Positions 37,545 to 61,816 of a DNA stretch of 64,000 nucleotides are shown here, one piece after another. The notes under the pieces were generated by a model that saw nothing but the letters and a program-made list of their open reading frames with translations, had not been told where the DNA came from and searched no databases. The stretch covers positions 147,118 through 211,117 of the IMG/VR virus record IMGVR_UViG_3300009104_001827. One strand, given 5' to 3'. The position numbers and the translations under genes were made by a program. The number at the start of each line of letters is the position of its first letter. The stretch's first letter is position 1.

Positions 37545-38259
37545 GCATTAGTTCCTTAGGCCAATATTCGCTCAGATCTAGAGCGGATTTGAAGCCTGTG
37601 GGCGAATGAAGAGGAGCCTTCCTGATTCTGGCAATTATGCCCGGCTTCTGGGCGAATGGTATATTTTCATCTTTCCTAATTTCTGAAATAGATAGCTCCG
37701 CATATAAATCTATTAGACGGTCCCATTGCTTGTGCATGGATTCAGCCTTGCTTAAAAATTTTTCAATTAATAATTCCTTGGGAACATTTATAAAAATTTC
37801 ACTACAAATCAAATCGTCTATTAGATGATTTAGCGGCACCCCCTCAGGAATAGAGCTTTCACCGGAGAAAAATTCTATTGCGGTAACCTTATGCTTGTCA
37901 TCGAGATCTTTAATTATGCCCCTGCCAAATGGGTTGGCTTCAAGAATAAACCGATCGACCTGCCCCCGCACCCACTCCTTAGACGGTTGACATTCGCCGT
38001 ATATGAGCTGCCCAGGTCGAACGCCGTCGGGGTTCTCAAAGAGCACCCCCGTGATTTCCGCTTCGTTCTCTATTTTGACAACCCTTTTTCTGAAAAATTC
38101 ATAGCAGGCAAAAAAGCTAAATTCTTTATGTCTGGCCTGCCCCTGAGGAATTAATCTCGTGCAGTTTGAAAACAGTCCCCGGGTAATGAAGCCTGCTTTT
38201 GATAGAAAATGCACCTCTACTACGGTGTTGCTCAGAGCTCCATATAATATGTTATCCAT
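37519..38259 (-). CDS. Hypothetical protein, possible fibre assembly chaperone
   Basis: Directly downstream of the giant fibre gene; C-terminal IRKAP...L..YWPKELMPKP resembles tail-fibre-assembly tails. Confidence 0.5.
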   Translation of the reverse strand: MDNILYGALSNTVVEVHFLSKAGFITRGLFSNCTRLIPQGQARHKEFSFFACYEFFRKRVVKIENEAEITGVLFENPDGVRPGQLIYGECQPSKEWVRGQVDRFILEANPFGRGIIKDLDDKHKVTAIEFFSGESSIPEGVPLNHLIDDLICSEIFINVPKELLIEKFLSKAESMHKQWDRLIDLYAELSISEIRKDENIPFAQKPGIIARIRKAPLHSPTGFKSALDLSEYWPKELMPKPSSVFS

Positions 38260-38269
38260 AATTGTATTA

Positions 38270-41200
38270 TTAGTCAGTATCTACTTTATTACCAGTATCT
38301 TCCCAGGAATCTTTCCATTTTGCAGACCCCAGTATCGACAGGAAAAGTTCCCCGTTGGGAATTATGGTTCCACCAGGAAGGGCATTCCCTATCTTCTCTT
38401 CCCATGAATCACATATTCCGCGCATTCTAGCCAGGCATTGCGAGTGCGCAGCCCCACCGATGTAAATCACTTCGCAATCACCATCTACGCCTGCGGCCCC
38501 ATATTTATCGCAGTATTCAGTTGTGATTTCAATTAGGTCTGCGTCCGTAAATCCCGGATGGCCTTTATATGGGCCGCCGGGTTGAAAAGTGTTGCTATCA
38601 CTATAATTCGATGCGACCTGCGGATTTCTAGCGAAAGCTTCAGCCTCCTCTTGGGTGTCAAAATAATCGTTGGGAAATATTGACATTGTTCCCGCTAAAT
38701 TACTGCCCTCCCGGACGCCAGCGGCGCCTTGGTGTTTAGAATTATCATGTGATCCGTCGTAATCATCAAAACCAACAACAGGTAATTTAAAAGTTCCACC
38801 CCCACTCTTTACCCACCAAGGGGGGATATGCTCACCGTCCACGTGGGGAAGAGAGTGGTTAGTATACGGAAATACCGAGTCACCCACTGGCGTACCCCCC
38901 CAACGGCCGTCAGGATTATAAGCATTCCACGGGTTCGAGGCGCCGACAACATACGAAGTTCCGGCACCAAGATGGGTAGTGAATTCATCGGACGAATTTA
39001 ACCTAAGAAACGCCTGACATTCGTAAAGCTCCCCCTTCCACCAAGCCCGGTCCCCCGGGTAATATTGCGTTCGCGGAGTCATCGTGACGTATATGTCAGC
39101 ATTATCTCCCGCGCCCTCAGGTTTCCCTCCTTCACTTAGTTCCCAGCCTCCATAATCCCAAATTCTCTCGAGATTTATATTCTCCCATAGCCAATTTCTT
39201 CCAGCAACCCATTTTCTCGTCTTATGATCGTACCAGGAAAACCCTAGTTTCTCCCTTTCTTTTGCCCTGCGTATCACCCAGTTTATCGCCGCATCGCGCG
39301 AAGCAAACATTTTAGACCCCCTACAGGTTATTGATACATCCTCAGAGTCATAAATATCCGTAGAGCCTTTCAGTATGTTGTCGCTTCCTGCTTCTGCGTT
39401 TATGTACCATTTAGTAAGCTCCTGCTTGTTTCCGGAATCTAGGTAGCTCTCTGAATAAAACGCGCCCTTCGCTCCAGTCAATAGCCAGCCCAGGGAATCC
39501 CCATTTTCACCAATGTATTCCCACTTGTTATTTGCTCCGCCAGGAGCATCATCTCCTGTTCCGTAGCCAGATGCACTTCCCCCTTCCTCATTAAATCTCC
39601 ACACCTTCCAAACGCCGCCGTCTTGGGTTTTTACTAAATCCCCCCTATAGTAGCCGGGCGGGGAATATGGACGCACCTGACAGCCGCCCCATGCCCCCGG
39701 TTCTAAGTTGTTGCCGAAACCCCAACCCGACATTTGAAGGGAGGGGTGGAGCTTTCTAAGTAATCGTTCCCATGACTTTTTTCTTAAAAGGGGCTGGTCA
39801 TAAGCCTCACCCAACCACATCGGGCCATTCGAGGAATCCGGAAGGAACTGGTTGGTGACTTTCTTCGCTCCGGACCAGTCCACCTTACCAAAAGCGTCCC
39901 CCACCTCAGTTGGGGGTGTGTTTATCGACGAATTTGCGCCCGCATCCACGTCCGCTTGCGTGGCAATACGATAGTCTCCCCACATCATCGGATGGTCCTC
40001 AGCACCCCCCATCGTTGACTCCCCGGGTACGTTGCGATATATGGGGTCCAACACGGTAGGAGATAATCCATCACTGATCTTGTCGTCATATTCCTCCTGC
40101 CACCTAGATTTACTTTCGCTAGGCGGGGGAAAGGGCTCGTAGGAGCCCAAATGCCAAAAGGCATAAATTGCGCAGGTATCCCACGCAGCTCCCACACCAT
40201 GACTGCCGCAATTTTTAGCCAAGAACAGATCTCCATCAGACAATATTACGTCTCCCGCGCAGTGAGGAAGGCTGGCGTTAGTATAAGCGCTTCTATATAA
40301 GCTTTCTCCTAGTGGTCCAGATCCAGCAGGTTGGGCGGCAGTTCCAGGCTCGCTCGCGTAATACGGCCGATACATCGCAGGCAAACCATTAGTCATAGTT
40401 TCCCAGTCGGCTGCAGACACTCTTCCATATTCCCCCCACGTCGGCCTCCAGTCGAACATTCTCCAGGGATGAAAGAACATTATGGAATTGTAAACATTAA
40501 AAAGACCCCAATCGTGGCCAACTTGACCACCGTACCAAAGGGCATCTGCACTAAGAACATTCCATCCGCTTTTCTTGGCGATAAAAGAGGAATCTCCGCG
40601 ATGCTCCAATTCGCCAATACCCAAACCTAGTTCGCTGGTCCCCGATGCGAAGTTCAGCATGTATTGCCTAATCGAGTCACCGGCACCCGTGGGCCAATAC
40701 CCATTGGGCAAGTCAAAAGTCCACTCCTCCCACTCCTCCCCAAACTCATCGACCCAATCGTCAATAGTCTCGTGAAGCTCGCCATTGACCCACTCCCGAT
40801 CCCACCCAGGGAAAACCACGGTATATCTCTTGCCCAGTTCAATATCTTTCGCCCATATTATTTCCGGGGCATAAATCGTCGATGCCAGCGGATTATATTC
40901 GTCAATTTCCTCCGCATTTATAAACCTTTCGGCAAGTTCAAACCTCAATTCTCGATTATGTCTAGCCGTATATGGCCTATCCTTCCAATTCTCAATCATA
41001 TCTTTGGCGGAATAAAGCGCGAATTTCTCAGGATTCTGGTCAGCGCCTTGATTATGAGAAGTGCAACCTCCGTCGCCGGGAGTGCCGCCGTCGGAAACCT
41101 GATTGTCGGGCCCTCCGTGATGATTGCCGATGACCCAATGCGGCTTAGTCCCTGCCCCGTCCTCAATACTGCTCTTCCAAACCCCGGTGGTCCCAGGCAT

Positions 41201-44200
41201 TGTGTCGTCCCCCCTTATACCAAGGCCTCGATTGTAGTTGTCTGTCGCAGGATCACCCCAATCACCCCAATCTTTAGCCCAGTCGTGAGGCATCAGCCAT
41301 AGGTTTCCTTTATATATAACCCTATCACCATGACGATACCACGTAGAACTGTCCCAATCAAGTATTTCCTGAAATAAATCCGTCCACCATGATTGAATAA
41401 ACTTGGTCCCGGCTTTCGGAAAATCTCCATATTTTATTGTGCCGCTCGGAATGTCGTTGTATGCCCTCCATAAGCGACGGTTACGTTTGGGGCTACGATG
41501 ATCCTGAATGGATATTATATCTCCGGCGGATATATCATTTTCCCACAACCAGTTCATACATTCCCCTACGGGGATATTAGTTAAATCCGTGACCGCCAAT
41601 TCATTGTATTGAGAACTTCGTTTCGATTGAGAGCAGTAGGAGTCCATTTGATTTTCTCGCCCACGCCAGGAATGGGCCTCATCGGGCCCAATCGTAAAAT
41701 TATTCATTCCGTGCCTTTTGAGTTGGCCGTAAGCTTCCATGACATCTGTCATCGGGCCAAACCCAAAGTCTACCGCTCGCTGAGGGAATTTATAAAAACC
41801 AGCATATCGATTGAGCGAGCCCGCTCCCTGTTGAGCAAGGAAGGCTAACCAATGCTCGTAATTAGAGATTCCGGGGGCGGTATGTGGAGCCCCCTGCGAC
41901 TGGCGTCTGTGCGGTAGTTGATTACCGGAAGAAAAGACTTGTCCCGCAAGCGTAAAGGTAGGATATGAACCAAAATTGACGCCAATCCATACCTCTAATC
42001 TCTGTGTCCAATCCCACCCTTGGCGAAGCTGATTAAGAGCAAAAACCCAATCCCAAACGCTATAACCGTTGCCCGCATCCAAGCCTTCCAATTGTTCTGC
42101 CCCAGCGGGAAGATACCTCTGCCAGTAAGTTGGAGAGGGAACCTCACGGTTAATAAAAGTATAGCCTTGAGTATCAGTCAATTCTATAGTTTCTTTATTA
42201 TCTGAGGTTCGTTGATTCCATCCTGGAACATCGAATACGTCAAATTCCCCCAATCCGGAAAAGTTGTCGGGTTGTCGTTGATCAAGGCCCGCTGAATAAT
42301 TTCGATAATCCACCGCAAGGGACACCTTGCCAGCCTTGTCGCCCCTGTCTGCCCATGCCAGCGCGCAATGGCCGCCTATTTTTTCGGCGAAACCCGTGTA
42401 AATTTGGCTATGACCAATGGAGGTGGCGTAACCTCGCAGGAACCTTTTATACGGATCGCCGCCCCACTTTTGGCCCAGCTCCATTGTTTGGTGCATTATG
42501 CCTATCTGAGTTCGCCACCTGTGCTCCTTTTCGAGGCGGTCCACAGACCACATACTACTGTAACCAGTTTTCCCAGCCCCGGCCCCGTCTTTATCGGGAG
42601 CTATGTATGTGCCGTTAGGAATGGGCGCACCACCCTCAATACCTCCTTGACCCTCTTCCACCCTCCAATGCATTCTATATACTGTTCCACCAAAGTTGAA
42701 CCTATCGCCGGGCTTCAAAAATGTATAATTATCGTGAGAAATTGCATCGCCGACCAAACCGTGATTGTGATACTTGCCCAATTTGGTCATGGTGTTGGAG
42801 TTCGGATCCAACCAACCCCAAGACACATTCTCGCCGACGCCTTGGTTTTCTTGCCCGACAAGCAAACTGAATTGCGACTTCCAACTTTGATGAGCCTTAT
42901 CCCCGAAGGGCAAAGACCACGGGTCGCACATCCAGGCCCCAAACATGGCGGTTGAGGGGAAATTTATCCTTCTATACTCCAAATGACCCTGCAAGAGCAA
43001 AGAAAATACAGAGTCAGGTATTACCTCCGGACAACCTTGAGTAAGCGCTCCGGTCTGCAGTCCCAATATTTTTGTCAGACTCCCGCGTCCTGACGCCGCA
43101 GTAAGCCTTGGGTTCTTTGGTTCGTCCTTCACTCCAAACTGAGAGCTCTCAGCTTTAGTGGTATCAAAATCGCCAACAATCCAAGCATCATCATTAAATC
43201 TGTCATTGAAATTTCCGCCGAAAATAGAGTAGCCGAAAGTGTACGCCAAAGAATCTCCAAACGAGCTATGCAAGCCCCAAGTATCGGTCGCAGCCTCTGA
43301 GTATCTCTCAATTTTGGAGTATATTGGCCATTTTATGTCAGGATGATACTCTCCTTCATTCCCTGCGGTTGCCATATCGGGCACCTCGGAAATGCTACCC
43401 GCCGGCTTCCAGCTGTAAGTTTCGTCGCCAGTAAACCGGTTCATAAATTTAAACGCATCAAGCGCGCCTCGGGGGTGGTGAGTAGGGAGTGCTGGGGCCC
43501 ATTGGGAAACGCTCATCTCCCCCATCACTTGCCACCAATTATACATGCCATCAGGAGGATTTTGTGAATTATTCGCATGATTCACTACGCCGGGAAAGTA
43601 ATAATTGTTCCATCCGTGCTCAGAAGCATTAGAGAATAAATCGATCAAGTCCAGTTGACCTGCTGTGGGCCATGATTTAAAATTGAAGTCCCGTATAAAG
43701 CTCGGCGCGAACGGATCTAGTGAACCCCACCCGCAGCTCGCGTCTCCCCACGCTAAGCTCACTACATGGGAAAGCATGTTCGTCCAGGTGACAGTTATAC
43801 CGGTCGGCGCATTGGAGCCAGACACAAAACTGCCCAATAGATTATGGGTAAAATCTATATATTCGGTGTCGAGCAAATTCTTCTCATTCACTATATTGGT
43901 ATTACTGTCGCCATAGAATGGGTTGACAGATTCTCCGAAAATCGAACCTGCCGTCCCGAGATATTCGTTGTCTTGCCCTCCATAATATAAATACATAGTC
44001 CCTGACCCCCCATAATCGACTTGACTGGTGACGCCGACGCCCGCATGGTCAAGGTCTAGGTGCCACCCTGAAATTCTTTCGTCGGCCCAGGTTGACGCAT
44101 TAGTTCGAAGGGAGGTATAGCTCTTTCCTCCAATAATATCCCCGGAGGAATCCGGGGCATACATGACCTGGAAGCCCTTGGAAAATAACTCCCCGCTCTC

Positions 44201-47200
44201 GTTTACATAACTAATTGTTGCCCATCTATCAAGCTGCCATTCCCTGTAAAAATATTGAATTGGGTTAACATTAATCATTGACGCGGAGGACTCCCTCCAA
44301 TACAATTCCCCAAGAGAACTGCCAGGTTCAAAGGAAAAGAAATGGTCTTTAATACATTGGTAAATCGTGCCTTTATGAGTTACAAAATCAGGTTCGCGAC
44401 CAATAAACGCAGAACCCGCCTGATCGGCATTGGACCCTGCTACCATATCACTACCATAACCGTGATGAAATAGTGTATTTGGTTGCCCGTTTAGGAGCTG
44501 CGAATGCCCAGAGGGAAGGCTTGTTCGGTATGATTTGTTTGATACCCATGCGTCAGCCAATCGATTAATTTCCGGGAGAACCTTGTCCCGAATATCCTTC
44601 GACCCCTTACGACACAACTTGCCATCGATAAATTGTGGCCACTTTCGAATTCGCCGCTTGGGTTTACTCCAAAAGCCAAAAGAATCCATAAATACCTGCT
44701 TTGCAATAATAGGCTCACCCTCTCGACCACTTGCGTCATCAAGAATTACCGCAGGAGCCCCCTTGAACGAGTAATTCTCTAAATAAGGACGCAAACCAAC
44801 GCCCCCACATTTGTATGACCTTCCTTCCGATATAAATGTCGCACAATCACCTTGTAAAGATATGAATTCTACATTTGGAAAAATAAATTCGGGGCCATCC
44901 AAAAATTCAGATTCCAATCCGAGCGCATTCCCAAGTGAGCGCCCCTCATATTCATCCCTATCAGAGCCCGATATTTTATTCTCACCCGTTCCAAAAAGAT
45001 TTCCCGATTGAGAAAGAATGAGAGAATTATTACCAGAGGCGGCGACAGCGATAATCTCGTCTAGTTCCACGGCTTGATTGTTGTTATTACCATGAGAAAT
45101 TAAATGCGGTTTTATAAAGATTTCCCTAGTGCAGAAATGCGTGTCACCGAATGCTTTTTTATATAATTTGAAATTTGCAGTGCGGGGCATTTTAATTTCC
45201 GACGAAGGAAAAGTGTGAGTAGCACCGTCGTTTGGCATCATTCCTAATTTTCCCAAAGGGAACCATCCAGACAAACCCGTCGACCCAAGTGTGCCACCTG
45301 CGCCATTTTCCTGATTAACAAGGGCATGCATCGCCTCACCAATAGAGCCAAACGTGAGAACCTCCACGTCAGGCTTCTGCCATTTCCCTAATTTGTTGGT
45401 ATCCGCCCAATCCGACTTGAGCGTTTCAGGGGGCAGAGTCTCAAGTCCTCCGTTCTCCGTTATGCTCGGAATGGATATTTGGAGATGCTCCTGAAGTAAT
45501 GTACCTTCTACGCCTTCGCCGGGGCCGACGTAAACGACATGAGAAACGTGGTCTATCCAAACCCGACTTCCGGGCTGATAAGTTTTACCATAGGCCCATT
45601 TTTCAGGAGGTAGTGCCGGTTGCTCTATTGCGCTCCACGAAGGATCGTAAATTGGGTTAAGGCTAGAGGGGGCGGTGCCCTCTAACTTATAAAAACCTTT
45701 GCCGGACTCCCTGCCCAATCTATCGCCTAAATCGAAATCGCTTTCGATTCCCCCGGTTTTGTTTCTCCAATCTATTTGCTGCAGGGAATTGTCCCCAACG
45801 CCGAACACTTTGCCTGAGGCAGTCCTTATTAGAATGTGGTCGGAGCCAGCCTCAACTTGCAGCGCCTTATCAGAGCCATAATCCTCGTGGTCGTATAGCG
45901 TATGAGGCTCGGGAGTAAGAGTTGTACTGCTAATCTCATCCTCTATATCTGCCAGCGAATTTGTGCTCAGGTCATAGGTTTTAGTGATCGCCTTGGGTGC
46001 GGGCATCGACCATTTTTTGCCGTCCACTCGCTCAAGGGATTCGCTAAAGCCTATATCGCTAGTATTGTCGTCCTTCATGGAAACGAACACCAGAGTACCG
46101 AAAAGGTCATCTCCATCAGCGACCTGAGCGGTAACAATGTCGCCCTCATTATAGGAAGATTTCGATATTGTACTGCCTTGATATTCTGGGTCCTCACCCA
46201 TGCCGGCAGCCGCAGTATAATCGAAAAACCCAGAAAACCCGCGTGGCGAATACTTTATATGATTTTCCCAACTTCCGATGCCAGGCAAATTGGACCCGTA
46301 AATGGCGTCGTTATCAAGTATCCAACCCGCATGAAAGACAATATCCCCACTGTCATGAAATTCTTCGTTCACGGCCGCACCACCAATTTCGGCAGAAAGC
46401 AAATACCTGAATTTTCCCTCATCGCCCAGTAACCCCCATCCAGTTGGCTGACCCCAGTCATATTCCCACATGTAAAAAGTGTGATACCCTTGAGCAAGTA
46501 CGAGCGGTGGATCGAGGTCCTCATGATGACCTCCCCCATTATTCTCGGGCCACGTCCAAGCGCTCGCTGCCATCACTTTGTCCTGATCATAGCCCGTACC
46601 TGTTTCTCCAGCAACGCCATCGGCATAAGCTCGTACGTCAGGAGGGCCGTCATCGAGAATCGACCACACAACCCTATGGTCATTATACGAAATCATCCCG
46701 TATCTTGTTTGAACAATAGTGCTCCAATCTCCAGCGGTTCTTGCATCGGTCGTTTTTCCCGGAGAATACATAACTCCCCACCTTCCTTGGGTCAAAATCT
46801 CAGGCTTAATAGTTCTTAAAACAATCCCAGAAGAAGGTCTTACGTATATATGGAAGAAAATTCCTGAATCCTTCCTCCAGCCGGTCCCAGTGCCGGTAAA
46901 AGCTAGTTTCCCTACGATCTCTCCGTCAATCACGGGGAAGAGGGCATTCCCTACGCCATAATTTTCCGCATTAGACGATATTTCAGTAAAATCAATATCT
47001 ATCCCGCTCATAAAACACTCGAAGCGCTCGCCGTCCTCCTTCTTAGTTTTCTCTGCGTCAGTAATGTAAATCCATTGTCCGTATTTAGCGGTATAATACC
47101 AATTGCCGCCGGTTTTGCCCAATGACGTCAGCTTATTGTTTGCAGCCTGGGAGGCCCTGGCAAGGAAGGTGTGTCCTAATATCGGGTCTTCCACCCAATC

Positions 47201-50200
47201 CCTCATATAGGTTTGACTGACATACTTATTACGGAACCATTCGCTTTTCGCCAGGGTCCTTCGCTCAAGGGTCGACTTATGCCTGATGGCCCCGTATCGA
47301 GTGGCTCGATCTGCTTCCGTCAGGGGCCCTGCCCAATGCAGCTTTGCATATTCTTCGCCCGTCATCCAAGGGTAGAGTTCTTCTCTAGCATCAGCTACGT
47401 CAGTCCAAACATTCATATAATAATCCCAGTCGGTTTGGTCGCCATACCAAGTATAACCGGCGTAATCCTCCTTTTGTTCGTAGTCCTCTAAGGGGTATGG
47501 AAGTATCCCGGTCACCATATCTGTACTAAGTTTTCCGGCAGCACCACCAATTCCATTTCCAGCCCGGTGCTGGATCCGATATTCAGTTTTAACCTCCGCG
47601 TCCTCAGTCCATATCTCTGCGCCATATCCTAACAATAATGGAGCGTTTATGGTAAGGTTGGTCACCAGTAGTCCTGCAGGGTTATTAACGTTCCCCGCAT
47701 TTTTCACATACATCACCAATGCATTATTTCCTGCCGCTCCAGCTCCAGCCCTAAAGATATTACTAGCCCCGATGCCCTGGGGTCCGATGTCTATGGAGTT
47801 AAGCTCCCCAAACCACCCCCCATACCAGGCTGCGGTCACAGGCTTGCAGGAAACGCTATATATAAAAGCTGTCGAGTCACTCGAGGTAGTGTGGCATATA
47901 AATTCTACGCTGTGAGAGGTATGCGTGGCGACGAAAGTAAACTTTGTTTCCGTCCATCCAGACCCCAAATCTCCGACGTCAATGGCTTGGTGCCCACTTC
48001 CTGCATAATCGTTAACTAGATTTCCTCCTTGTACCGCTTCTAAGTTGTCAACAGTCGCGGTCGGCACGCCTCCCTCCCACGCCCAAATTATTGCTCCAAC
48101 ATCAGGCTCGGAGTAGGCGGTCCGGTATGAGACAAAAAACCGCACCTCATATTTCTGGCCCACCGTCAGGGGTTTTGGATAATTCGGCCCATACCTTTCT
48201 GCACTCAGTTCAGATCCTTGATGCCACTGAGTGAAGCCTGCTCCGCCAAGCTTGTCGGGATTCCATGTTCCAAGCTGAACGTATTCATTAACCGATGGGT
48301 TGAGGGATCCGGAGTCTTTATGGCCCCCGAATCCATATGTGTTAGGCGTATAATCATACCCCCAGGGCACGAGGTGCAATCTTGCCGCGCCACTGAGGCC
48401 TCCTGTTTCAACATGAGACTGTAACCCCCAATAATAATTCGCGCCCCCGTATTTACTTCGCATCACGCCTGGCTCAGTGTCGTAGCCCAACTGGCGCGAT
48501 CCCCACGCACTGCAATTGTCCTGTATAATTACAACCTTGGCGAAATTATAAACCCCCATACAGGCCAAATCAGAGAGGCTTGGCTTATTGGAGTTGTCCC
48601 AGGTGGTCGGATGATTTGGCCGGCTATAGTCGTAGCTTTTGTCAAGCAAATTACTGAGATATTCAAAACGGTTACCGTGGTTATCCAGATGCAATTCTAG
48701 CGTCTGAGCCACGTAGTGGGTCGTTTGGTTTAATTGTTCATACGCTGGATAATGCATCCCGTGGTCGCGAAGCTCCTCATCCAAGTTTGAGCCACTCGCC
48801 CCAAACCAAGATGTTGCAGTATTCCCAAACCCGTCCCTGTCGTTATTCTCCCCCCAAAAAGTCCCCCATTTTGTAACTCCGGGTAAAATTTGTTGTTCCC
48901 CAGATTTGCGAGCATGATCGTGCCAGTATGTGGTATACTTGGGGTTGCCGTTGTTGTCCACAAAATCCGGATGATCCTCTAGCCATAACCACACGTTGGC
49001 AGTCCAGTTGTCGGGAAATAATGGTCGCCACCCAAAAAGGTACTGGTGGCCATTGCCACCAGCATAACCAAGCATAGACTTATTAAAGTCCCAATTAGTC
49101 AGGTAAGATGTTGTCTCCCATTCCTCACCAGTAACCAAGTCGGGATTTATGCTGTGCCACCCGGCCTCACTGTGGATTTGAATATCCAGCATTGTATTAT
49201 CCACTGCGAAGTCGAATGACACTGTAACCTGTGATACATCAATTCCTTCATCAAGGTGAAAGGCTTGATAGAAAACGGGAGTGGCTTGCGGCCATAAAGT
49301 CGGCACCCCACCTTGTTCACTCCACCAAACCCCCACCCAGCTACTTCCTTCTGGCGCATCCAGCCAGTTCCCCGGAATAAGATTGTTTGGTATCCAGGCC
49401 GCTGGGTAGAGGGGGTCGTTCGCCGTTGCGGGTAACACGCCGTTGGGCTGCACAGACCAAGCGGTATCCTTTTTGCTGTCGGAAGAATATTGGCCCCCAA
49501 ACTGGACCCCAGTATTATAAATGTTAATCTCTTTGTGAGATTCTCGCTGAGTCAGTACGGACCATACCGCAACATCAGCGGGGGTTTTGTCCACCGTAGT
49601 AGTGACGGCTCCCTTGGCATATTGTTTATCAAATTCGTTGGAATTATAATAGGTTGCGGTGCTCGCCCTCCAATATCCATTATAGAACCAAATTAAATTA
49701 TCTACATTTGCAACGTGCCTATATACCGGGTAACCACCGGTTGGACTGGGGAGGTCGACCTTCCGGTACGATCCCGCAATCCCCACGCTGGGGTCACTGA
49801 TGGTTGTGCCGTCCTGACGGATTACATTTCCACCAAAGAACTCAATGGAACCCCAGTCTTCTTCAGCGATCCTTTTAACATCTGGATTTAAACCATTGCT
49901 GTCCGTAGCAACATAGGCTGGCCCCGTGTTTGGCCAATATTTATGGAGATAATTATTGTTTAAATTATCGAAATTTGTGCTGGCTGCATCCTGGGTAACC
50001 AGCGGGGTGATACTCTCGCTTACGCTATTCCACTCGCCAGGAATAACTCCAGGAAAGGTGTGGGCTCCAGCGCCTTGATCCCCAATTTTACTCCAAAGGG
50101 AGCCCGAGTAGGATACATATTGACCGTTAACATAATCTATATGTTCTATATATGGCTCCCAGGTTTCTCCGTAGGCAATATTGCCTTGTATTAGCGATCC

Positions 50201-53200
50201 ATATTTTACGGCTTCCCCACCCGCAAATGGGTCGGGATCGCGGTCCGTCATATGATGAATCAGGCCCCAGTTGTCATTTTGCCAAAGTTCATTTACCGTT
50301 AAATCTCCGAACGAATCAAAGGTATCGCTCCCACCATGGAACATAACATTATCCGCTCGCCTGACCTCGCCATGGGTTGCTTCGCTGTGGAAATCCAAGC
50401 CTTGCACCGGGATGTCCTTGCACCCTATAATTGACCCTAGGATTTTTACATCGCCGTCTTCTGTGACGTAGATCGTAGAATGCTCATTTGTTGACGCCCA
50501 AACAACATTATCATCTGTTAATTTTACCGGAAACGGGACCGCCGGAGCATTGCGGTTTGCAGCCAATTTAAGGCAGTTCGCCCTAAGATTATTGTCATCG
50601 TTATTATTGAGAGAGTGCTGACTCGGGCGATCCATGTATGAATAATTTGCTCGATCCTTAAGCCTATACATCGCAAGGGCGAGGCATTCAGTGCCAGATA
50701 CCGTCATGGTCTTGCTATCGTGGAAGTAATCTATAACGCAATGATTTTTGTGCGATCCCCCGTAAGGCAGGTCTAGATCTGGCCAGCCTATGTACTCCCA
50801 TTTGGGACTAATCCCCGGCTCGTCTTCCGGAAGGGCGTTTTCGATGGAGACCCATCGTTCGCCCAAATGCTCCCTTTCCTTAAACCAACTAATGGACTCA
50901 TTATCGGTCCACGGAGCTGCTTCGCGGGCTCCATTGTATTTCTTGTCGTGCCCCCACCAGCTCCGCTCATTCCAATCCGGGGTGCCCCATTCGCGCGTAG
51001 TGTTAAAGCGGTCCCCATCGTCCCATTGAGACGTTGGGTACAAATTCTGAAATTTACCATGTGGCCACGAGATGCCGTTCCAGGAAGTGAGCTTGTTGGA
51101 AATTTCCGCATTATCCCGATACGGAAAAAGCCAAGCTGGAACCATCCACCCTCTGTCATTTTGTACGGCCGCCCCCGCCATATGTCGCTCTTTGCTCCCC
51201 TCAAACCCTGCGACAACAAAATGTTCCCTCTTCTTCGTCGCAGAATTATCGGTATCTGTGCCGCCATAAAATTCCCAAGCGGGCTTTATCATCATGGTAG
51301 AAAGACTCTTAGCGTACTCCGATGTACCATCGAGAGAGAACGAGACATCATAAGCACCCTCCGCTCCGGATCGAGCCTGTCTTGCGAATGGAATATAGTC
51401 CTCAGAGTTGAGAATAAAATGAGTATTTACGACCTTGGGAACGCCCCGGTTGTCAGGCTTATCAAACCCGACGCATTCAATCCCCCCTTCTTTCCAGAAG
51501 TTTATATTGTCGTACCACGGAAGAATTCTTCCTGCGATTTTTAATTGCTCCTGAGAGGCCCACCAAGGTGTCACGCCAGCAGGATATAACTCTTCCTCCG
51601 GAATCCATGTTACATTATTATGCAAATAGGAATCTTGCTCGGCGCTAGTCTTATCGAACCAGTCTAACGGAAATGTGGCCCATGCCATCCTCTCCCATTG
51701 CGGGGCAGGGTTAGCCCGGTTATGATCTTTTGTTAGGTACGTCGCCCACCCCGCAAGGTGGGGGTCGTTTTTATTGCTTGCAATTGGGTCGCCTGCGGCG
51801 TGGTTAAAGTTGGCATATGATAAAAGGTCGAATCTGTCTTCGGCATCAATCAAATCATGAGACCAATCTCCCCAGTCTTCGGGATCGTCGCTAGAGCTAT
51901 TGAAGCTTTTATCTGTGATGCCTAGGGAGTTGTTTTCGTTCTTCCCGAATCCATATAGCTTCTTGTCTGTAGTAATAAATACGGTATTACCTCCCCCAGA
52001 CCTAACGAAATCTATGTCGGGTTCTGGGTCTAATAAGGTATCAGTCGTGCCGTTCGCGTATATTTTTACCCTTTGCAGCTCGTCGTCTTGTGCGTCCTTC
52101 AATGGGGCACACATATTATGCTTTCCAAACGTATCTAAGTTCCATTCTAAATTTGAACCGTAATATGTTTCAGGTTTGCCGTCAATTTTCTTATAATTAC
52201 TAATTCCGAGGTACCCCAACTCGGAGCTGTCCATTCCAGAGGCATACAGCTTATTATTTGAGATCATGAATCTATTTTGCCAGCCCAAACCAGCAGAAAC
52301 GGCATAGGTTTTGCTAACGGCATTATTTACGTCAAGATACGTATCTGCGTCCACATCCGGAGCCGCGCCACTTACGTTTGTAATCTTAACTGACATTGGG
52401 AGGATCGCCGTGTTCTGTAGTCCCGCAAATGAATTGCCCAATTTAAATTCTGAAACGAACCCTAAATTCCCCCTCAAGACCGTGGGCGAATTAAAGGCAT
52501 AATTAAATAAATCAACATCTTTCCTTTGTGTGCCCCCAGGGTTCTCATTAGAGAAAAGGGATAACGTCAATTCTTTTGTTGAACTCATATAGCTCTGGCC
52601 ATCAACGGCTTGCATCTCGAATGAGATATTAATATTCAAGCCGGAATTGGTAAATATATTTGACATGTTATCAAATGGCCTCAAAAGATATTCGCTTTCG
52701 CCATGAGTGGAGTCGAGTATATTTTCTGCGCTGGGACTAACTCCTCCCGCTGGTTCGCCTGAAGCATTATGAGCGTCTAAGCATGAATAAAATACCATTA
52801 CGTCATTTGATTGGCTCAGCTCGTTTTGCGTCGGCAAACTTCCGGAATCCTCATTGGAGTTCCACACCACACCTCTTTCCTTCGCGTAGACTATATCTCC
52901 CAATTCATAGGGTAAGTTATTTTTCCATTCATCCACTCGCTGCCACATGGATTCAAACAAAGACGGCTGAACGCCAGAAGACGCGCGCCGAGCGTAATAT
53001 AATATATTTAGTTCCTTTGTGAAATCTCCGGTGTCGAATGATTGATCGTGGGTCCAGGGAGCAATCTCTCCCTCTGGTCCGCTGATGTTTTTCCATTTTG
53101 GCATTACCTGCAATTTATCTCCAAGCTGCTCAAGCAGTCCTATATTAGATCCGTTGTTTTCTATTTTGAGTATTGAAGAATTTTTATGGGACACTTCATC

Positions 53201-56200
53201 GTATTGGTATTCAATTTTACTATTCATGCCGCCCAACAAAGAATCTGAATCGAGGAGCGACTCACTAATAATCCTTGATGCATACTCCACAGGTCGAACA
53301 AATACCCAAGATTCACTCACGCCAGGTACTTGGCCTGCGGGGATATCAGTATCGGCTTGCCACACATAGGTGCCATCGTGCACTGCCTCGTCAGCGGAGT
53401 AGGCCTGGTTGGAAAGCCACTGAGATGGTTCGCCGATCCTTATGTAGGGACTTTCCATAATCCCTGCGTATGTCAGTCCAAAATCAGAATAAGAATCGCC
53501 GGTGTTTATCGGCAACCTTAGGTATCTTCCTAAAACATTAGCATTGGACATAGAGGAAATAAACCCAGAGTAGGTCGTAAAGTTATTCCCGTCCGCCCCC
53601 TTTAGCTGGGGGATTAGTTTAATTGTTTGATTGGAATTGATGCTGATTTCCCCACCATCATATATTGCGCCATGATTTGGATGGCCAGTATCGGCGTTTC
53701 CTCCAGTATATATTTCAGTTGTTAACTCTATTGTTGGAGGGTATGACTCATCCTCTTTAACGAACTTAATTGGATTTACATCGCCCACTCCTCGACTATC
53801 GAGATTAAATCCTGCGTCGAGATTGAAGTCGATATCACTATCAATCGAGTCCACCCAACCCCTGAAGGCCCGTATGGCAGGATGCCTATCTTCATCTTGA
53901 TTATTCTCGTTAAGTGGGTGTGGAAGGTCTCCCGAAGAAAGGGTGTCGCCTTCTGCCCTCAGATCAACGTTCCAGTCCTCATAGTTAACACTTACATAGT
54001 CAAGCGATGCCAAAAACAAAGGGCTATCTGCATCCGGAACGCCGCCGACCCAAGTATCTATCATATGTGTTGTGGGATATTTTATTCTTGGAGTCCAGAA
54101 CTTCGCATTGTTGCCGGAGGCATCATAGGTTTTTAATCTTGGCCCAAAAATATCCAGCCTAGAGTTGAAGGCTTCAGACACGGCGTATTCGCTTGAACCT
54201 TCGGCCTTATGTATAAAATCAAAATCTCCTTCAGTTAAAAAGTATTGTGGCTCCACGCCAGCAGCGATCTCCTCTGAAGATGGATAGGTGCGATCAAGGT
54301 CAAATTCCCTACGCGCCACCGGCTGCCAATATTCACTAGGACGAATAACCAATGTATAGTTGCTCGTAAATCCACTCATAGTCCCGGAATTTATCGACAC
54401 GGGGAATTCGTAGATTTTTTTACCGACATACCCGGAAATGTCAGCCTTATATTGAAGGCCCTCTATAACGGTTGAGTTTTGCAAGTTCCCTTCCAAAACA
54501 AAATTATCATCCAATAGGGGAGTTGCATCCGAGACATAACAGAACTGTTTAATTTTAACCCGCCATTCATTGTCGTCCATTTTTACGGCGTCACCAATTC
54601 GATAGTAATTTTCATAGGTAAGATCATATGAATAATTATCCGAACCAAAGAGGTCCCTCTGTCGAATTTTGAATTTTCCATCCAATTCCTCCAACCCGTA
54701 ATATTGAGCGTAAGCCCTTCCTCGATTGTCATTATTTGCGGGATCGACATTAGGGTCAATGCGCTCTGCGGTAAATTCGTTCTCGGTAATTTCGAGCCAA
54801 GTCGTTTCGGCATATAAGTTCTTTCCTCTAAATCTGGAATATTGTAGATCTTCTACTAGGTTCGATAAAAAATACGCCGTCTCACTTGCGGACTCTTTTG
54901 GAAATATCCCAGGAACAATCCCCACACCGGCCGGATCTGCAGGAGAATCTGTATCCTTTATGCACTGAAAGCAATATGAGGCGACCGCTGCGTCTGCCTT
55001 AAGAAATAAAAACTCAGCACTATCCAAAAGGTTCGTATTCTCATCTGTGGGATAGCGCCCGGCCCACTCCTGGTAGGTCAGGCTTTCCCCCGAATTCGGG
55101 TCGACCATAGTAGGGGTTTTCTCCTTAAGTGTGACAAGATCTCCGACCTTGTAATTTTCGGCCTGCTCCATATCCCACGGAGCTATATCATACAATCTTT
55201 CAGACATTAATCCAAGTCCGCTTGCTCCATCAAGAGAATTAAACCACTGAAGTCCTAGCGTAATCCCCGATTTGTTATTCGGGGGAGAAGTAGATAGGCC
55301 CGTCTGTGACGACTTAAAGATTTTAACCCAACCATCGTAGAGGGTAATCTGAGTAACCATGGATAATGGTGAAATCGCGGTATTGCTGAGAATACTTAGC
55401 CTGGTCCACTTCTCTTTGTTTAAAATTGGATCGTTATCTGCCGATGCCCCCATCGAGACATTAGCCTTAAAGAATAAATTTAAATGTAATGGAAAAAAGT
55501 TTTCATTATCATTCTTTAGGGATTTGTAATATATTTTTGCTCCGTCGTCTTGATATACGTATACTGTGTTATGCTCGTTTCCCGGAGAAACCCATTCAGA
55601 ATATACTTTCTCTTGTCTCCAGGCATCACACGCGATTGCTGTGGTCACCTCCCACCAATCTTCCCGTGGGACCCTAGTCATATTGCCTCCGGAATATTCC
55701 TTGGTATCATTCCATTCAGGTATATTTGCCAAGGTCTGAACGTTGCCCTGGGGATTTCCCGTACGATCAACAGTTAAACTGAAAATAGATTCCTGCTGGA
55801 GGTCCGATCGCCCCAAATCTATAAAGTGTTTTGCCTCAAATAAATTTTGCGATGTATCCGCATCAATCGTAGTCGACAAAACCTGATTGCCATCGGCAGT
55901 AAGATCTTTAAACTTACTACCGTCAAAACCCTTAAAGCCAGTCTGAAGCAACCCTAATGCTGCACTAAACTCTGAATCCGACATCTCGTCAGTTCTTTTT
56001 AGAATAGGCAGAAAAGCGGCGTCAACGTGAGAATTGATAAATTTCTTGCCTTCATTCTCGATCTGATCTGCCCTGCCGAGCTTGTTGCCTAATATTAAAT
56101 AGTGACAGGGGTTGTCTCCACTAACCGAGGCGCTACCGGTTATAGTCTTAATTGAGAGCAATTTGGTCAAAGCCTGATCCTGGGTGCTGGACTCAAGTTC

Positions 56201-58039: not shown

Positions 58040-58554
58040 TACTTGCTAAAAATTACCTTTGAATATTTATCGTCTATGGGTTCTATTTTTCCACCCATAA
58101 ACTTTAGCCATCTAATACCGAGGCTATTATCCGCCTCAACAATATTAACCAAATGATCAAATTCTTCCCCAAACAGCCAATCAAAATGCTCTCTGGATAT
58201 TCTCATAAATTCATATACTGCAAACATAGCTTTAAGGTTGCCAAATGACTTAAAAAAGTCGCTCTTAGATTTAATCATGTCCAGAGAATTCCTAGAGCCG
58301 AGCACCCAGACCTGACCTATGCGTTCTTGAGGGGAATGGGCGACCCCGGTGGAGCCGATATATGTTTCGTCTTTTAAGCAAAAGCTAATTGTTCGAATTG
58401 ATCTGTTGAAGGTTTCATAAACATGCTTTTCGTGGTTTGGCCACCCGAGATAATCCGAATGTCGCGAGTCCACGTTCCTTGGATTCAATGATAGCTCGAT
58501 AATATCTGAGTCGATGACATCCCTGACATAACCGTGTTTTCCTAATATTTTCAT
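58039..58554 (-). CDS. GNAT-fold acetyltransferase, DUF2833/T7 gp13-like
   Basis: GQVWVLGS, LVNIVEADNSLGIRWLKFMG; TAATG-coupled to the giant gene. Confidence 0.7.
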   Translation of the reverse strand: MKILGKHGYVRDVIDSDIIELSLNPRNVDSRHSDYLGWPNHEKHVYETFNRSIRTISFCLKDETYIGSTGVAHSPQERIGQVWVLGSRNSLDMIKSKSDFFKSFGNLKAMFAVYEFMRISREHFDWLFGEEFDHLVNIVEADNSLGIRWLKFMGGKIEPIDDKYSKVIFSK

Positions 58555-58655: not shown

Positions 58656-59255
58656 ATGAGAATTTCGCACAAAAACAAATGGATCTTCCTGTCGTCATCC
58701 AGAACCGGCTCCACTTCTACTCGTAAAGCATTAGATAAATTTAGTGACATAAAGTCGGTGCATTATTCTAAATGCGAAGAAGAGCAAAATCCATTCTATA
58801 ACCATATAAGCTTAAGGGAGGTTCAATCTATATTCAAGCATGATAATATAGACTTCAAATCATACACAACATTTACTGCGGTACGCAATCCATGGGACAG
58901 GGCGTTATCTTTGTATTTTCACTCTCAACAAATTATGCATAATCCTGCCCCCACCGCATTTAGCGATTGGATAAAAAAAGTACAAGCCAGAGGCCCTTTA
59001 TATGGTCAAATTTACAACCAGTGCTTAGATGATAAAAATCAATATGCGATAGATTCTATAATCAGGTTTGAGCATATGCAAAAAGACTTCAATGTTGTTT
59101 GCGACAAAATAGGGATCTCAAGACAACAACTTCCACACGTAAATGCAACCAAACACAAACACTACACCGAATACTATAACTATGAAACCCATGAAATCGT
59201 TGCCGAAAAATACGCAAAAGATATTGAACATTTCGGATATGAATTTGGAGATTAA
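58656..59255 (+). CDS. Sulfotransferase family 2 protein
   Basis: ISHKNKWIFLSSSRTGSTS (5'-PSB), VRNPWDRALSLY (3'-PB), IIRFE. Confidence 0.85.
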   Translation: MRISHKNKWIFLSSSRTGSTSTRKALDKFSDIKSVHYSKCEEEQNPFYNHISLREVQSIFKHDNIDFKSYTTFTAVRNPWDRALSLYFHSQQIMHNPAPTAFSDWIKKVQARGPLYGQIYNQCLDDKNQYAIDSIIRFEHMQKDFNVVCDKIGISRQQLPHVNATKHKHYTEYYNYETHEIVAEKYAKDIEHFGYEFGD

Positions 59256-59257
59256 AA

Positions 59258-59842
59258 ATGATAAGTCACAAACATAAATTTATTTTTGTTCATATCAATA
59301 AAACTGGAGGTACGAGTATTGAAGTGTTATTAAAGAAGTATTCAAACAAATTTGAAAAACATCAATCAATTATTGACTTAAATAAAGAAGCATCTTCTAA
59401 CGATTATTTTAAATTCACTTTCGTAAGAAACAGTTGGGATAGATTCTTATCCTTGTACAAATACCGAATAAAAACAAACCAAACAAAGCTTGGTAGTAAT
59501 CCCATACCCTTTAAAGAATGGGCAAAACATATCTATGATAAGAACCCGAAATATTACAATACTCCTAACAAATTTAAACTTCTTATGTTATCAGATCAAC
59601 TTGACTGGATCACAGATGCAAATGGTAGTGTGAACATGGATTTCATCGGAAGATTTGAAAACCTCCAAGAAGACTTTAATATCGTGTGTGACAATATTGA
59701 AATTCCACATTCACAACTTCCACATATAAACAAAACTGAACACAAACATTATACCGAATATTACGATGAAGAAACAAAGCAAATCGTTGCCGAAACATAC
59801 GCAAAAGACATTGAGTATTTCGGATATAAATTTGGAGATTAA
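59258..59842 (+). CDS. Sulfotransferase family 2 protein
   Basis: FVHINKTGGTSI, VRNSWDRFLSLY, FIGRFENL. Confidence 0.88.
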   Translation: MISHKHKFIFVHINKTGGTSIEVLLKKYSNKFEKHQSIIDLNKEASSNDYFKFTFVRNSWDRFLSLYKYRIKTNQTKLGSNPIPFKEWAKHIYDKNPKYYNTPNKFKLLMLSDQLDWITDANGSVNMDFIGRFENLQEDFNIVCDNIEIPHSQLPHINKTEHKHYTEYYDEETKQIVAETYAKDIEYFGYKFGD

Positions 59843-60478
59843 ATGATTACTTTTATTCACATAGGAAAATGCGGCGGCACTACAATCAAAAGAACACTGA
59901 TAGATAATGCTGTTAAATTTAGGCATATTCACCTTAAACGTCCTGAGCATGAGCCTGACTCAAAATATCTTATTGCATTGAGAAATCCAGTAGAGCGTTT
60001 TATTTCAGCGTTCTATTGGCGCAGATTTTTATTACTCAGCGGTCAAGAAGCTGGAGGAAAAGAGCTAGAATTTTATAAAGAGTATAAAGATTTGAACAAC
60101 GTATGCGAGCATCTTTTTGACGAGAACAGCAACTTAAATCCATTGATTGACTCGAAAATTCACCAACATTATACATGCGGACACCCCTCTCATGTAGGCA
60201 TGGGCATCGATTATTATATTGGAGGCATAACAAGAGAACTGACTCCGAAAAATGTTTTTGGCGCGATATGCACTGAAACACTCTCTCAAGATATGAAAAG
60301 ACTGTTTGACGTTGAAGTTACCAGGCATGCTAGAAAAAATTCTGCGAACAAGTTAGAAACAACACAGCAATCAAGATTTCTCTTAAAGAAATATTTAGCA
60401 AAAGACTATCAATGTATTGATAAATTATATTTATCGAATATCTTATCCGAAGAGCAATACGAAATATTAAAAACATGA
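59843..60478 (+). CDS. Sulfotransferase family protein
   Basis: FIHIGKCGGTTI, LRNPVERFISAF. Confidence 0.82.
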   Translation: MITFIHIGKCGGTTIKRTLIDNAVKFRHIHLKRPEHEPDSKYLIALRNPVERFISAFYWRRFLLLSGQEAGGKELEFYKEYKDLNNVCEHLFDENSNLNPLIDSKIHQHYTCGHPSHVGMGIDYYIGGITRELTPKNVFGAICTETLSQDMKRLFDVEVTRHARKNSANKLETTQQSRFLLKKYLAKDYQCIDKLYLSNILSEEQYEILKT

Positions 60479-60484
60479 AAAAAA

Positions 60485-61816
60485 ATGATTAGCCATAAAC
60501 ATAAATATATATTTGTCCATATCCCTAAATGCGGAGGAAGCAGCACGGAACTATCCCTGCTTGAGGCGGAGGGCGTGGATTGTAGCGATGCCAACGAAAT
60601 AAACCAATTACCCGAAGATATACTGAGTACATATTTCATGAACAATGATCTTGCCATGGAACCCCAACACTATACGCTTGAAGAATATCCGGAGTATTTT
60701 CAAAAAGAATATTTTTGTTTTACAATAATAAGGAATCCGTGGGAGATTTGGGTTAGCGAGTACCATCACGAATTGAGGGTCAGGAAAAGACTGGGCAGAC
60801 CTAAAGTCACTTTTGAGGAGTTTATACGGAAGAATAAAGGCTTCAAGTATCACCTTCGAAGCCAAATGGATTTCATTAATCAAAACATGGACTATGTAGG
60901 TAGAATGGAGAGTATAGATTCTGACTTTATGGAAATATGCGACAAATTAGGTATTGACGCTCAGCTGAAACACAGAAACAAAGGAAAATACGAAAATCAT
61001 TACAGCGAATACTACAACGAAGGGATTCTATCTCTTATAAATTCACACAATTCCCTCCTAGGATCAACTGGAAAACTTGATGCGCAACTTATGGGGTACG
61101 AGAGTAATCCCGGCAATCCAAAGAGTGAAAACGAAGAAAATCCCCACGAAGCAACAATGGACAATGTCTTCTTTATTAATCTCGACAGTAGAAAAGACCG
61201 AAAAGAGCTCGTAGAGAATGAACTCAACGAGCTAAATTGGTCTTATGAGAGATTCCCCGGAACCAAAACTTCTGACGGAAGAATAGGGGCGACGATAAGC
61301 CACATAGGAGCGCTAGAGTTGGCTGCGGCGAGAGATCTGGATTACGCCGTAATTTTAGAGGATGATATCCACTTTAGGGATAAAGCTTTATTTTTGCGCC
61401 AGCTCAAAAAATGCCTAAAGGAGATCAATGACTTTGATGTATTACTTCTTGGGGGGCAGATTGGGCCAAAAGACGAGAGAATTACCGAATACGCGTTTAA
61501 ATTAAAACACTGCGTAACCGCAACGGGCTATATAGTTAACAAGCATTACTACAAGCGATTCCTTGAGCACTCGAAGAAAGGGCTTAATTTATTAATTGAA
61601 AACCCATCAGGGATCCGAAGTCAAAATCAATATGCATTTGATATTTATTGGTGGGAATTGCAGGAAAGGGATAAATGGTACATGGTCGCTCCCGCCTGCG
61701 TAGAACAAAGGGATGGATTTAGCGACATCAGAGAACAATATACTGACCACAGAAAATTATTCACAACCGCCTGGAAGGAGAAATCTCACCTAATTAATAC
61801 AAAGGGATATTGCTAA
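60485..61816 (+). CDS. Sulfotransferase-GT25 glycosyltransferase fusion
   Basis: N-half HIPKCGGSS and IRNPW; C-half FFINLDSRKDRK, GATISH, VILEDD, TGYIVN, QRDGFSDI. Confidence 0.85.
   Translation: MISHKHKYIFVHIPKCGGSSTELSLLEAEGVDCSDANEINQLPEDILSTYFMNNDLAMEPQHYTLEEYPEYFQKEYFCFTIIRNPWEIWVSEYHHELRVRKRLGRPKVTFEEFIRKNKGFKYHLRSQMDFINQNMDYVGRMESIDSDFMEICDKLGIDAQLKHRNKGKYENHYSEYYNEGILSLINSHNSLLGSTGKLDAQLMGYESNPGNPKSENEENPHEATMDNVFFINLDSRKDRKELVENELNELNWSYERFPGTKTSDGRIGATISHIGALELAAARDLDYAVILEDDIHFRDKALFLRQLKKCLKEINDFDVLLLGGQIGPKDERITEYAFKLKHCVTATGYIVNKHYYKRFLEHSKKGLNLLIENPSGIRSQNQYAFDIYWWELQERDKWYMVAPACVEQRDGFSDIREQYTDHRKLFTTAWKEKSHLINTKGYC

What the first reader, a model, noticed from the sequence alone, without database searches (positions are those of the whole stretch)
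44180..52310. A seven-blade RCC1-like propeller scattered over ~2700 residues of the giant protein
Seen: seven RCC1/BLIP-II-like blade motifs at about aa 1915 (AVSAGLGWQNRFMISNNKLYASG), 2015 (VRSGGGNTVFITTDKKLYGFGKN), 2515 (WASTNEHSTIYVTEDGDVKILG), 4060 (VEAGSDHILIRTASGKVFGVGDN), 4330 (VAASGNNSLILSQSGNLFGTGEN), 4390 (ISLQGDCATFISEGRSYKCG) and 4610 (ATISYVNESGELFSKG). Normal blade spacing is ~50 aa; here gaps reach ~500 and ~1500 aa. Inference: one propeller acts as a hub whose loops have accepted very large inserted domains, so the protein grew by loop insertion rather than end-to-end addition.
Basis: partly seen in the sequence, partly recalled or inferred. Interest (0 to 1): 0.75.

Follow-up and report, generated by a model that had tools for sequence, protein, structure and literature searches.

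The report
Split RCC1-like blades in phage giant
A 6,589-residue protein of a 211-kb marine phage carries real, conserved RCC1-type propeller blades that are pulled far apart by large variable inserts. Whether they close into one ring or into two could not be settled with the tools available.

Summary

**How well the blades are supported**
- Six of the seven score above an empirical null against an independent RCC1 blade profile. Three are strong and three are weak.
- The seventh (aa 4607) is supported only by conservation.
- Two further candidates exist, at aa 4443 and aa 4538.
- All are conserved in position in seven collinear relatives of about 6,000 aa. Blades keep 45-52% identity; the segments between them keep 13-21%.

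**What is supported**
- Large, length-variable inserts sit inside blades, between the third strand and the returning fourth strand. They measure about 450 aa, about 210 aa and 80-130 aa.
- So "blades split by big loop inserts" holds.

**What is not settled**
- The central claim is one ring closed across the roughly 1,430 aa that separate two blade clusters.
- AlphaFold2 failed on both clusters (pLDDT about 30).
- An ESMFold2 co-fold of the excised cores gave only weak support: score 0.42, best control 0.02, pLDDT below 50. It could also be a memory effect for RCC1 blades.
- No shorter relative with contiguous blades exists in the libraries searched.
- More than half of the protein lies outside the blade span, so growth by loop insertion alone is not supported.

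My estimates are two separate degenerate propellers about 45% and one split ring about 38%.

The parts
38270..58039 (-). Giant ORF, 6,589 aa. The N-terminus is conserved in distant homologues, so the long start is the real one.
52202..52318 (-).
   Evidence: hhalign score 25.2 against a null of at most 14.9; 51% identity to distant homologues
51905..52024 (-).
   Evidence: Blade HMM E 3e-9; hhalign 47.3; Pfam RCC1_2 21.9 bits
50558..51892 (-). Insert 1 (aa 2050-2494). It lies between the third strand of blade b and its returning fourth strand.
   Evidence: 15% identity and b-c spacing of 448-536 aa across the family; no Pfam match
50405..50548 (-).
   Evidence: hhalign 25.1; 45% identity; ESMFold2 puts aa 2498-2522 against blade b
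50240..50374 (-). Possible further blade c' (aa 2556-2600).
   Evidence: Pattern reading of alignment A4 only; 28% identity; not detected by any profile
45953..50239 (-). About 1,430 aa between the two blade clusters (aa 2601-4029). Fold unknown. It includes a hypervariable cassette (aa 3700-3935) and a conserved CBM5/12-like module (aa 3950-4029).
   Evidence: 13% identity, c-d spacing of 1251-1618 aa; no Pfam match; cassette
45755..45922 (-). This is the best RCC1 match.
   Evidence: Pfam RCC1_2 best stretch; blade HMM E 7e-11; hhalign 72.5
45140..45742 (-). Insert 2 (aa 4100-4300), inside blade d. It contains a CBM5/12-like hairpin.
   Evidence: 18% identity, d-e spacing of 240-271 aa; motif scan
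44945..45127 (-).
   Evidence: Blade HMM E 1.7e-8; hhalign 45.3
44735..44899 (-).
   Evidence: hhalign 17.0, just above the null; 52% identity and e-f spacing of 61-62 aa in all members
44660..44722 (-).
   Evidence: f-g spacing of 44-49 aa in all eight members and 44% identity; ESMFold2 contact at D4452, equivalent to the inner-strand turns of the other blades
44429..44659 (-). Insert 3 (aa 4461-4537), longer in the other family members.
   Evidence: 21% identity, g-h spacing of 162-216 aa
44258..44428 (-). Ambiguous element g' (aa 4538-4594). It is either a blade or a CBM5/12-like hairpin.
   Evidence: hhalign blade score 20.6; Pfam CBM_5_12 E 0.21; chitinase A1 binding domain 1ed7 E 0.3
44120..44257 (-).
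   Evidence: Conserved pattern in all eight members but only 28% identity; no general-profile hit
58039..58554 (-). Upstream gene, 171 aa, matching 'internal virion protein'. Its stop overlaps the giant's start (TAATG).
   Evidence: phrog_308 E 2.4e-10; sequence

Best explanation
The motifs are genuine RCC1-type propeller blades in a giant, probably virion-borne, host-binding protein of a marine siphovirus-like jumbo phage.

**Architecture.** The blades form two clusters.
- Cluster A (aa 1908-2600) has three clear blades, plus perhaps one more.
- Cluster B (aa 4040-4640) has five to six blades, of which e, f and g sit at canonical spacing.
- Within each cluster the conserved blade strands act as a rigid scaffold.
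- The loop between the third and fourth strand of a blade carries large, fast-evolving inserts. Some of these look like small CBM5/12-type sugar-binding hairpins.
- This is shown at the sequence level.

**Inferred, and only slightly favoured.** Each cluster closes, or packs, as its own degenerate propeller-like domain. The roughly 1,430 aa between them would then be a chain of ordinary intervening domains rather than one giant loop insert.

**Function (inferred).** The propeller cores display variable modules that bind host surface glycans. Two swap-prone cassettes elsewhere in the protein would tune host range.
For: **Blades are real and conserved.**

**Inserts are variable in length and sequence.**
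- Blades keep 45-52% identity; inserts keep 13-21%.
- A returning fourth strand sits directly before the next blade.
- ESMFold2 placed aa 2498-2522 on blade b.

**Cluster B can be read as nearly complete on its own.**
- Candidates are d, e, f, g, g' and h, plus a loose candidate at aa 4665-4700.
- Spacings e-f of 61-62 aa and f-g of 44-49 aa are canonical.

**Counting and precedent.**
- Eight to nine candidates in total do not fit one canonical seven-blade ring.
- Proteins with more than one RCC1-like domain are ordinary: P0020 and P0022 show 10-11 repeats.

**Phage and adhesin context.**
- Terminase, DNA polymerase and a virion-protein match lie nearby.
- The gene is translationally coupled to the 'internal virion protein' match.
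- The N-terminus is the most conserved part, as in fibres.
- Two hypervariable cassettes separate relatives that are 84-92% identical elsewhere.
- CBM5/12-like motifs occur throughout.
- Language-model features of the N-terminal 700 aa give a weak tail-fibre lead, score 0.75.
Against: - Cluster A has only three well-conserved blades. Its 445-aa insert looks helical and non-blade, so a closed ring from A alone needs three or four blades that no general or family-specific profile can see.
- The segments that would have to hold the missing blades are far less conserved than the visible blades.
- The ESMFold2 co-fold scored 0.42 for the A core against the rest, with a best control of 0.02. Confidence collapsed when the B core was swapped out although the neighbouring A piece stayed. 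Confident contacts reached the inner-strand turns of four B blades.
- Neither cluster folded alone in AlphaFold2, so no local domain has been demonstrated.
- Virion location and glycan binding are untested.
Confidence: 0.45

Rival explanations
1. One RCC1-type ring of seven or eight blades is built from both clusters. The chain leaves the ring after blade c (or c'), makes about 1,430 aa of inserted domains, and returns with a fourth strand just before blade d. The propeller is a hub, and every large insert sits in the same kind of loop.
For: - ESMFold2 co-fold of four excised cores scored 0.42 (runs 0.40, 0.42, 0.53) against controls of 0.00, 0.00 and 0.02.
- The score depended on the B core being present.
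- Contacts of the A core reach A4064/S4066, S4335, D4452 and T4608/S4610. These are equivalent turn positions of four B blades, as expected around a shared central pore.
- The whole protein holds only seven to nine blade-like elements in all eight family members, and neither cluster has seven clear ones.
- All the smaller inserts are in the same loop type, so a larger one there fits the pattern.
- The two clusters are always found together.
Against: - The tool's own verdict is 'weak support'. It states that such a pass is more often wrong than right unless the guess was likely beforehand. pLDDT was 43-49.
- RCC1 blades given as loose chains may be ringed from memory whatever their native partners. 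No control with foreign RCC1 blades could be run.
- The candidate count exceeds seven.
- A possible blade c' follows c locally, and a conserved 80-aa module precedes d.
- A discontinuous domain with a 1,430-aa multi-domain insert has, to my knowledge, no precedent of that size.
Confidence: 0.38
2. The blade clusters are incomplete arcs that are completed between subunits of an oligomeric fibre, as in small lectins whose propellers are built from several chains.
For: - Neither cluster has seven clear blades.
- Phage fibres are usually oligomers (general knowledge).
Against: - No evidence of the oligomeric state.
- Three or five blades per chain do not multiply to seven.
- Not tested here.
Confidence: 0.07
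3. Only the three strong motifs are RCC1 blades. The weaker ones are generic beta-hairpins of the CBM5/12 kind that pepper this protein, and no closed propeller exists.
For: - Motif c resembles a hairpin at aa 815-845 outside either cluster.
- g' is ambiguous between blade and CBM5/12.
- Motif h is not seen by any general profile.
Against: - Motifs a, c and f score above every null profile.
- Each is preceded by the expected outer strand and sits at blade-like register.
- Isolated RCC1 blades are not known to be stable.
Confidence: 0.1

Closest known systems
RCC1-like domains (RCC1, RPGR, HERC2, UVR8; Pfam PF00415, PF13540, PF25390)
   Same: Same blade motif. A profile of cluster B hits RCC1 chain 3mvd_K at E 4.7e-6, and RPGR, HERC2 and UVR8 more weakly. 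An HMM made from the giant's motifs recovers all seven blades of ordinary members.
   Different: Ordinary members have seven contiguous blades in about 350-400 aa. Here the blades are spread over 2,700 aa, the whole-domain model scores 30 bits against a cut-off of 150, and the number of blades is unclear.
Phage RCC1-like proteins, such as the eleven in jumbo coliphage phAPEC6 (PMC7247149), and viral RCC1 plus CBM5/12 proteins of 730-856 aa in the ESM Atlas
   Same: RCC1 repeats in proteins of large phages. Language-model features of aa 3950-4750 are nearest to viral clusters that combine RCC1 with CBM_5_12 (score 0.84, a lead only).
   Different: Those are proteins of normal size. Their sequences could not be retrieved for comparison, and no sequence-level homologue shorter than about 5,900 aa was found.
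Propellers with a domain inserted in a blade loop: the integrin alpha I domain, and the long insert in the alsin RCC1-like domain (general knowledge; Pfam PF25384)
   Same: A conserved ring that tolerates a folded or long insert between strands and displays it on one face.
   Different: Known inserts are about 200-300 aa. Here they are 210-450 aa within clusters, and 1,430 aa if the single-ring reading is right.
BLIP-II
   Same: It is a seven-blade propeller of the RCC1 superfamily (general knowledge).
   Different: No BLIP-II chain matched at E up to 1 in either Protein Data Bank search.

Membership tests
RCC1 repeat (PF13540 RCC1_2) | Repeat model score above the curated cut-off | tested here: met
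   45.6 bits against a cut-off of 22, two stretches, in aa 3950-4750. In aa 1800-2650 the score is 21.9 against 22, just under.
RCC1-like domain (PF25390 WD40_RLD) | Whole seven-blade domain matched contiguously above the cut-off | tested here: not met
   30.2 and 26.9 bits against a cut-off of 150. Only single-blade stretches align.
RCC1-like domain | Closed seven-blade propeller fold | tested here: inconclusive
   AlphaFold2 gave pLDDT 31 and 30.5. The ESMFold2 co-fold gave weak support at pLDDT 43-49.
RCC1-like domain | Seven blades, counted by profile | tested here: inconclusive
   Seven profile hits lie above the null, one of them ambiguous. Two further pattern-only candidates bring the total to eight or nine.
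CBM_5_12 (PF02839) | Model score above the curated cut-off | tested here: not met
   23.8 bits against 26.2 near aa 5562, and E 0.21 near aa 4551. Relatives P0004 and P0039-P0041 carry a precomputed PF02839 hit.
BLIP-II | Sequence match to solved BLIP-II chains | tested here: not met
   No match at E up to 1.
Phage tail fibre or adhesin | Match to a fibre family, or presence in virions | tested here: inconclusive
   No PHROG match for the giant. Only a 0.75 feature score to fibre-type clusters. The identifiable tail module lies elsewhere in the genome. Virion presence is not testable here.

The most novel reading that the evidence does not exclude
A single RCC1-type ring of seven or eight blades is closed across 2,700 residues. 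Every blade loop insert, including one of about 1,430 residues that holds several domains and a hypervariable cassette, is displayed from the same face. The propeller would then serve as the organising hub of a 6,589-residue phage adhesin.
Probability: 0.38. Interest if true: 0.72.

Novelty: new variant of a known kind. Interest (0 to 1): 0.5.

Why it matters
- Giant phage proteins of 5,000-6,500 aa are almost wholly unannotated. Here a recognisable fold gives a first handle on one such family: eight members, all from marine contigs of up to 208 kb.
- The result shows that RCC1-type blades can tolerate inserts of several hundred residues while staying under strong selection. That is useful for domain annotation, because whole-domain models miss such cases entirely.
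- If the single-ring reading holds, this would to my knowledge be the most extreme discontinuous domain described. It would also be a natural example of a propeller used as a display hub.
- If the two-ring reading holds, it is an unusually decorated but conventional architecture.

Tried and rejected
**Structure prediction**
- AlphaFold2 on aa 3950-4750 and aa 1750-2650, each with a 7-row alignment, gave pLDDT 31 and 30.5. The models are unusable, so no fold search was run on them.

**Search for shorter relatives with contiguous blades**
- Only proteins of about 5,900-6,500 aa were found, all with the same split layout.
- Viral and metagenome contig scans added no new diversity.
- The phage record collection gave no match.

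**Sequence-level tests**
- Internal repeats by BLASTP: none beyond single weak blade pairs.
- Assigning each blade to one of the seven positions of ordinary RCC1 domains, to test collinear descent: leave-one-out accuracy on ordinary domains was 18%, which is chance. The test has no power.
- A family-specific blade HMM, to find hidden blades: no further consistent site.
- Cluster A against cluster B by profile-profile comparison: only one-blade similarity, so they are not duplicates of a whole domain.

**Other**
- Pfam and PHROG on the inserts and the middle region, in this protein and five relatives: nothing except a borderline DUF4214 in two relatives.
- A diversity-generating retroelement as the cause of the hypervariable cassettes: no reverse transcriptase in the complete genome.
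Full report
**What is there**

The window is the last 64 kb of a 211,117-bp phage genome, a single contig rated complete. It carries a terminase, DNA polymerase, DnaB-type helicase, PhoH and a Lon-like protease.

The finding lies in one uninterrupted minus-strand ORF, window 38270-58039, of 6,589 aa. Its start overlaps the stop of an upstream 171-aa gene that matches an 'internal virion protein' family.

**Are they RCC1 blades, and more than chance?**

- Pfam RCC1_2 passes its cut-off in aa 3950-4750 (45.6 bits against 22). It is just under at aa 2012.
- An HMM made only from the giant's motifs finds seven blades at 50-60 aa spacing in 17 of the 33 ordinary RCC1 proteins recovered by the library search, and three to eleven in the others.
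- An independent blade HMM built from those proteins hits aa 2012, 4062 and 4332 at E 3e-9 to 7e-11.
- A profile-profile scan of the eight-member family alignment against that blade profile gives only seven hits in 6,589 columns. They are aa 4058, 2008 and 4328 (scores 72.5, 47.3, 45.3), aa 1910 and 2511 (25.2, 25.1), aa 4538 (20.6) and aa 4389 (17.0).
- Reversed or column-shuffled profiles reach 12.1-14.9 at best.
- No other ORF in the genome has such a motif.

The one at aa 4607 is not seen by a general profile.

**Relatives**

Only eight family members exist in the libraries searched: this protein, P0002 (84-92% identical), P0003, P0004, P0038, P0039, P0040 and P0041. All are 5,875-6,511 aa and collinear along the whole length. 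Contig scans added nothing new.

Every motif is conserved in place and in character in all of them.

| Segment | Identity to the six distant members |
|---|---|
| Blades a, b, c, d, f, g | 44-52% |
| Inserts | 13-21% |
| Whole protein | 22% |

| Blade pair | Spacing across the family, aa |
|---|---|
| a-b | 89-97 |
| b-c | 448-536 |
| c-d | 1251-1618 |
| d-e | 240-271 |
| e-f | 61-62 |
| f-g | 44-49 |
| g-h | 162-216 |

Its canonical and invariant spacing after blade f argues that it is a blade.

**Where the inserts sit**

Reading the family alignments, each large insert follows the third strand and its 'G.N..G.LG'-type loop. Each is followed by a short 'P..V/I/L' strand directly before the next blade's first strand. 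This holds for:
- the insert after blade b, whose returning strand lies at aa 2500-2507;
- the insert after blade d, whose returning strand lies at aa 4309-4314;
- the insert within g.

ESMFold2 placed aa 2498-2522 against blade b. So 'blades split by large loop inserts' is supported within each cluster. The inserts have no Pfam or PHROG match. Small CBM5/12-like hairpins recur about ten times along the protein.

**One ring or two?**

- AlphaFold2 on either cluster with 7-row alignments failed, with pLDDT 31 and 30.5.
- ESMFold2 scored the first A core at 0.42 (runs 0.40, 0.42, 0.53). Controls gave 0.00 and 0.00 with unrelated partners, and 0.02 when the large B core was replaced.
- The tool's verdict was 'weak support', with pLDDT 43-49.
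- Confident contacts of the A core include equivalent inner-strand turn residues of four B blades: A4064/S4066, S4335, D4452 and T4608/S4610. That is what a shared central pore would give.

Against over-reading this result:
- The tool itself says that such a pass is more often wrong than right unless the guess was likely beforehand.
- RCC1 blades offered as loose chains may be ringed from memory.
- The needed control, foreign RCC1 blades in place of cluster B, could not be run.

Counting blades does not decide either.
- Cluster A has three clear blades and one doubtful one.
- Cluster B has five clear or likely blades, plus an element that is ambiguous between a blade and a CBM5/12 hairpin, plus a loose candidate at aa 4665-4700.
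- The total is eight or nine. That does not fit a canonical seven-blade ring, but cluster A alone is far from complete.
- A family-specific HMM finds no hidden blades.
- The two clusters share only single-blade similarity.
- A test of collinear descent from a seven-blade ancestor had no power.

I put about 45% on two separately packed degenerate propellers and about 38% on one split ring. The remainder goes to inter-subunit completion or to no closed propeller.

**The growth claim**

About 3,850 of the 6,589 residues lie outside the blade span. No shorter relative with contiguous blades exists in the libraries searched. Growth 'by loop insertion rather than end-to-end addition' is therefore at best part of the story.

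**What the protein probably does (inferred)**

- The N-terminus is the most conserved part: 67% over the first 50 aa and about 60% over aa 400-600.
- Two cassettes, aa 3700-3935 and aa 5730-6130, drop to 19-36% identity between relatives that are 84-100% identical elsewhere.
- No reverse transcriptase is present.
- The composition is rich in Gly, Ser, Asp, Asn, Trp and Tyr.
- Sugar-binding-type hairpins recur along the protein.

This is the pattern of a virion-anchored host-binding fibre or adhesin. Its conserved cores would display variable binding modules. However, the recognisable tail module lies elsewhere in the genome: a 3,032-aa tape measure, a J-like protein and a 3,810-aa fibre. The giant has no fibre-family match beyond a weak language-model lead. 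Virion location and ligand are untested.

**Comparison with known systems**

The blades belong to the RCC1 repeat family by the repeat model but fail the whole-domain model. The closest solved relatives are RCC1, RPGR, HERC2 and UVR8, at the level of a single blade. RCC1-like proteins are known in jumbo phages (PMC7247149). Propellers with inserted domains are known from integrins and alsin (general knowledge), but with inserts of a few hundred residues. I rate this a new variant of a known kind.

Noticed in passing
window 46235-46942 (aa 3700-3935) and 39650-40852 (aa 5730-6130): Two hypervariable cassettes with many indels. Identity to P0002 falls to 19-36% there, against 84-100% elsewhere. 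They look like swapped host-range modules. No reverse transcriptase is present in the genome, so they are not made by a diversity-generating retroelement.
   Followed up: partly
giant ORF, near aa 263, 963, 1145, 1711, 2630, 3963, 4154, 4555, 5567 and 6130: About ten short 'Y..GD.V'-type hairpin modules resembling CBM5/12 sugar-binding domains are scattered along the protein. Only the one near aa 5562 comes close to the Pfam cut-off (23.8 against 26.2 bits).
   Followed up: partly
window 57434-58039 (aa 1-202): The database copy of this protein (P0001, 6,387 aa) starts 202 aa downstream of the ORF's first ATG. Distant homologues align from residue 2-3, and the first 50 aa are the best conserved part, so the longer start is right. 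It overlaps the upstream gene's stop (TAATG).
   Followed up: yes
P0002: The closest relative is filed in NCBI as a hypothetical protein of a Verrucomicrobiales genome bin, on a 207,716-bp contig. That contig is probably a phage genome binned with, or infecting, that host. This is a possible host lead.
   Followed up: no
genome outside the window: L018 477-9575, L019 117-5066 and 5069-16501: The same phage encodes a 3,032-aa tape measure protein, which implies a very long tail. It also encodes a 1,649-aa J-like central fibre and a 3,810-aa tail fibre with CBM_5_12 and an endosialidase-chaperone end.
   Followed up: partly
window 38000-52000 compared with the flanks: The 3' 14 kb of the giant gene has 47-50% G+C. 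The genome average is 43% and the region just beyond the gene's 5' end (58-64 kb) has 35-39%.
   Followed up: no
window 58656-61816 (+): Three neighbouring genes match sulfotransferase and glycosyltransferase families. They are transcribed divergently from the giant gene's operon.
   Followed up: no
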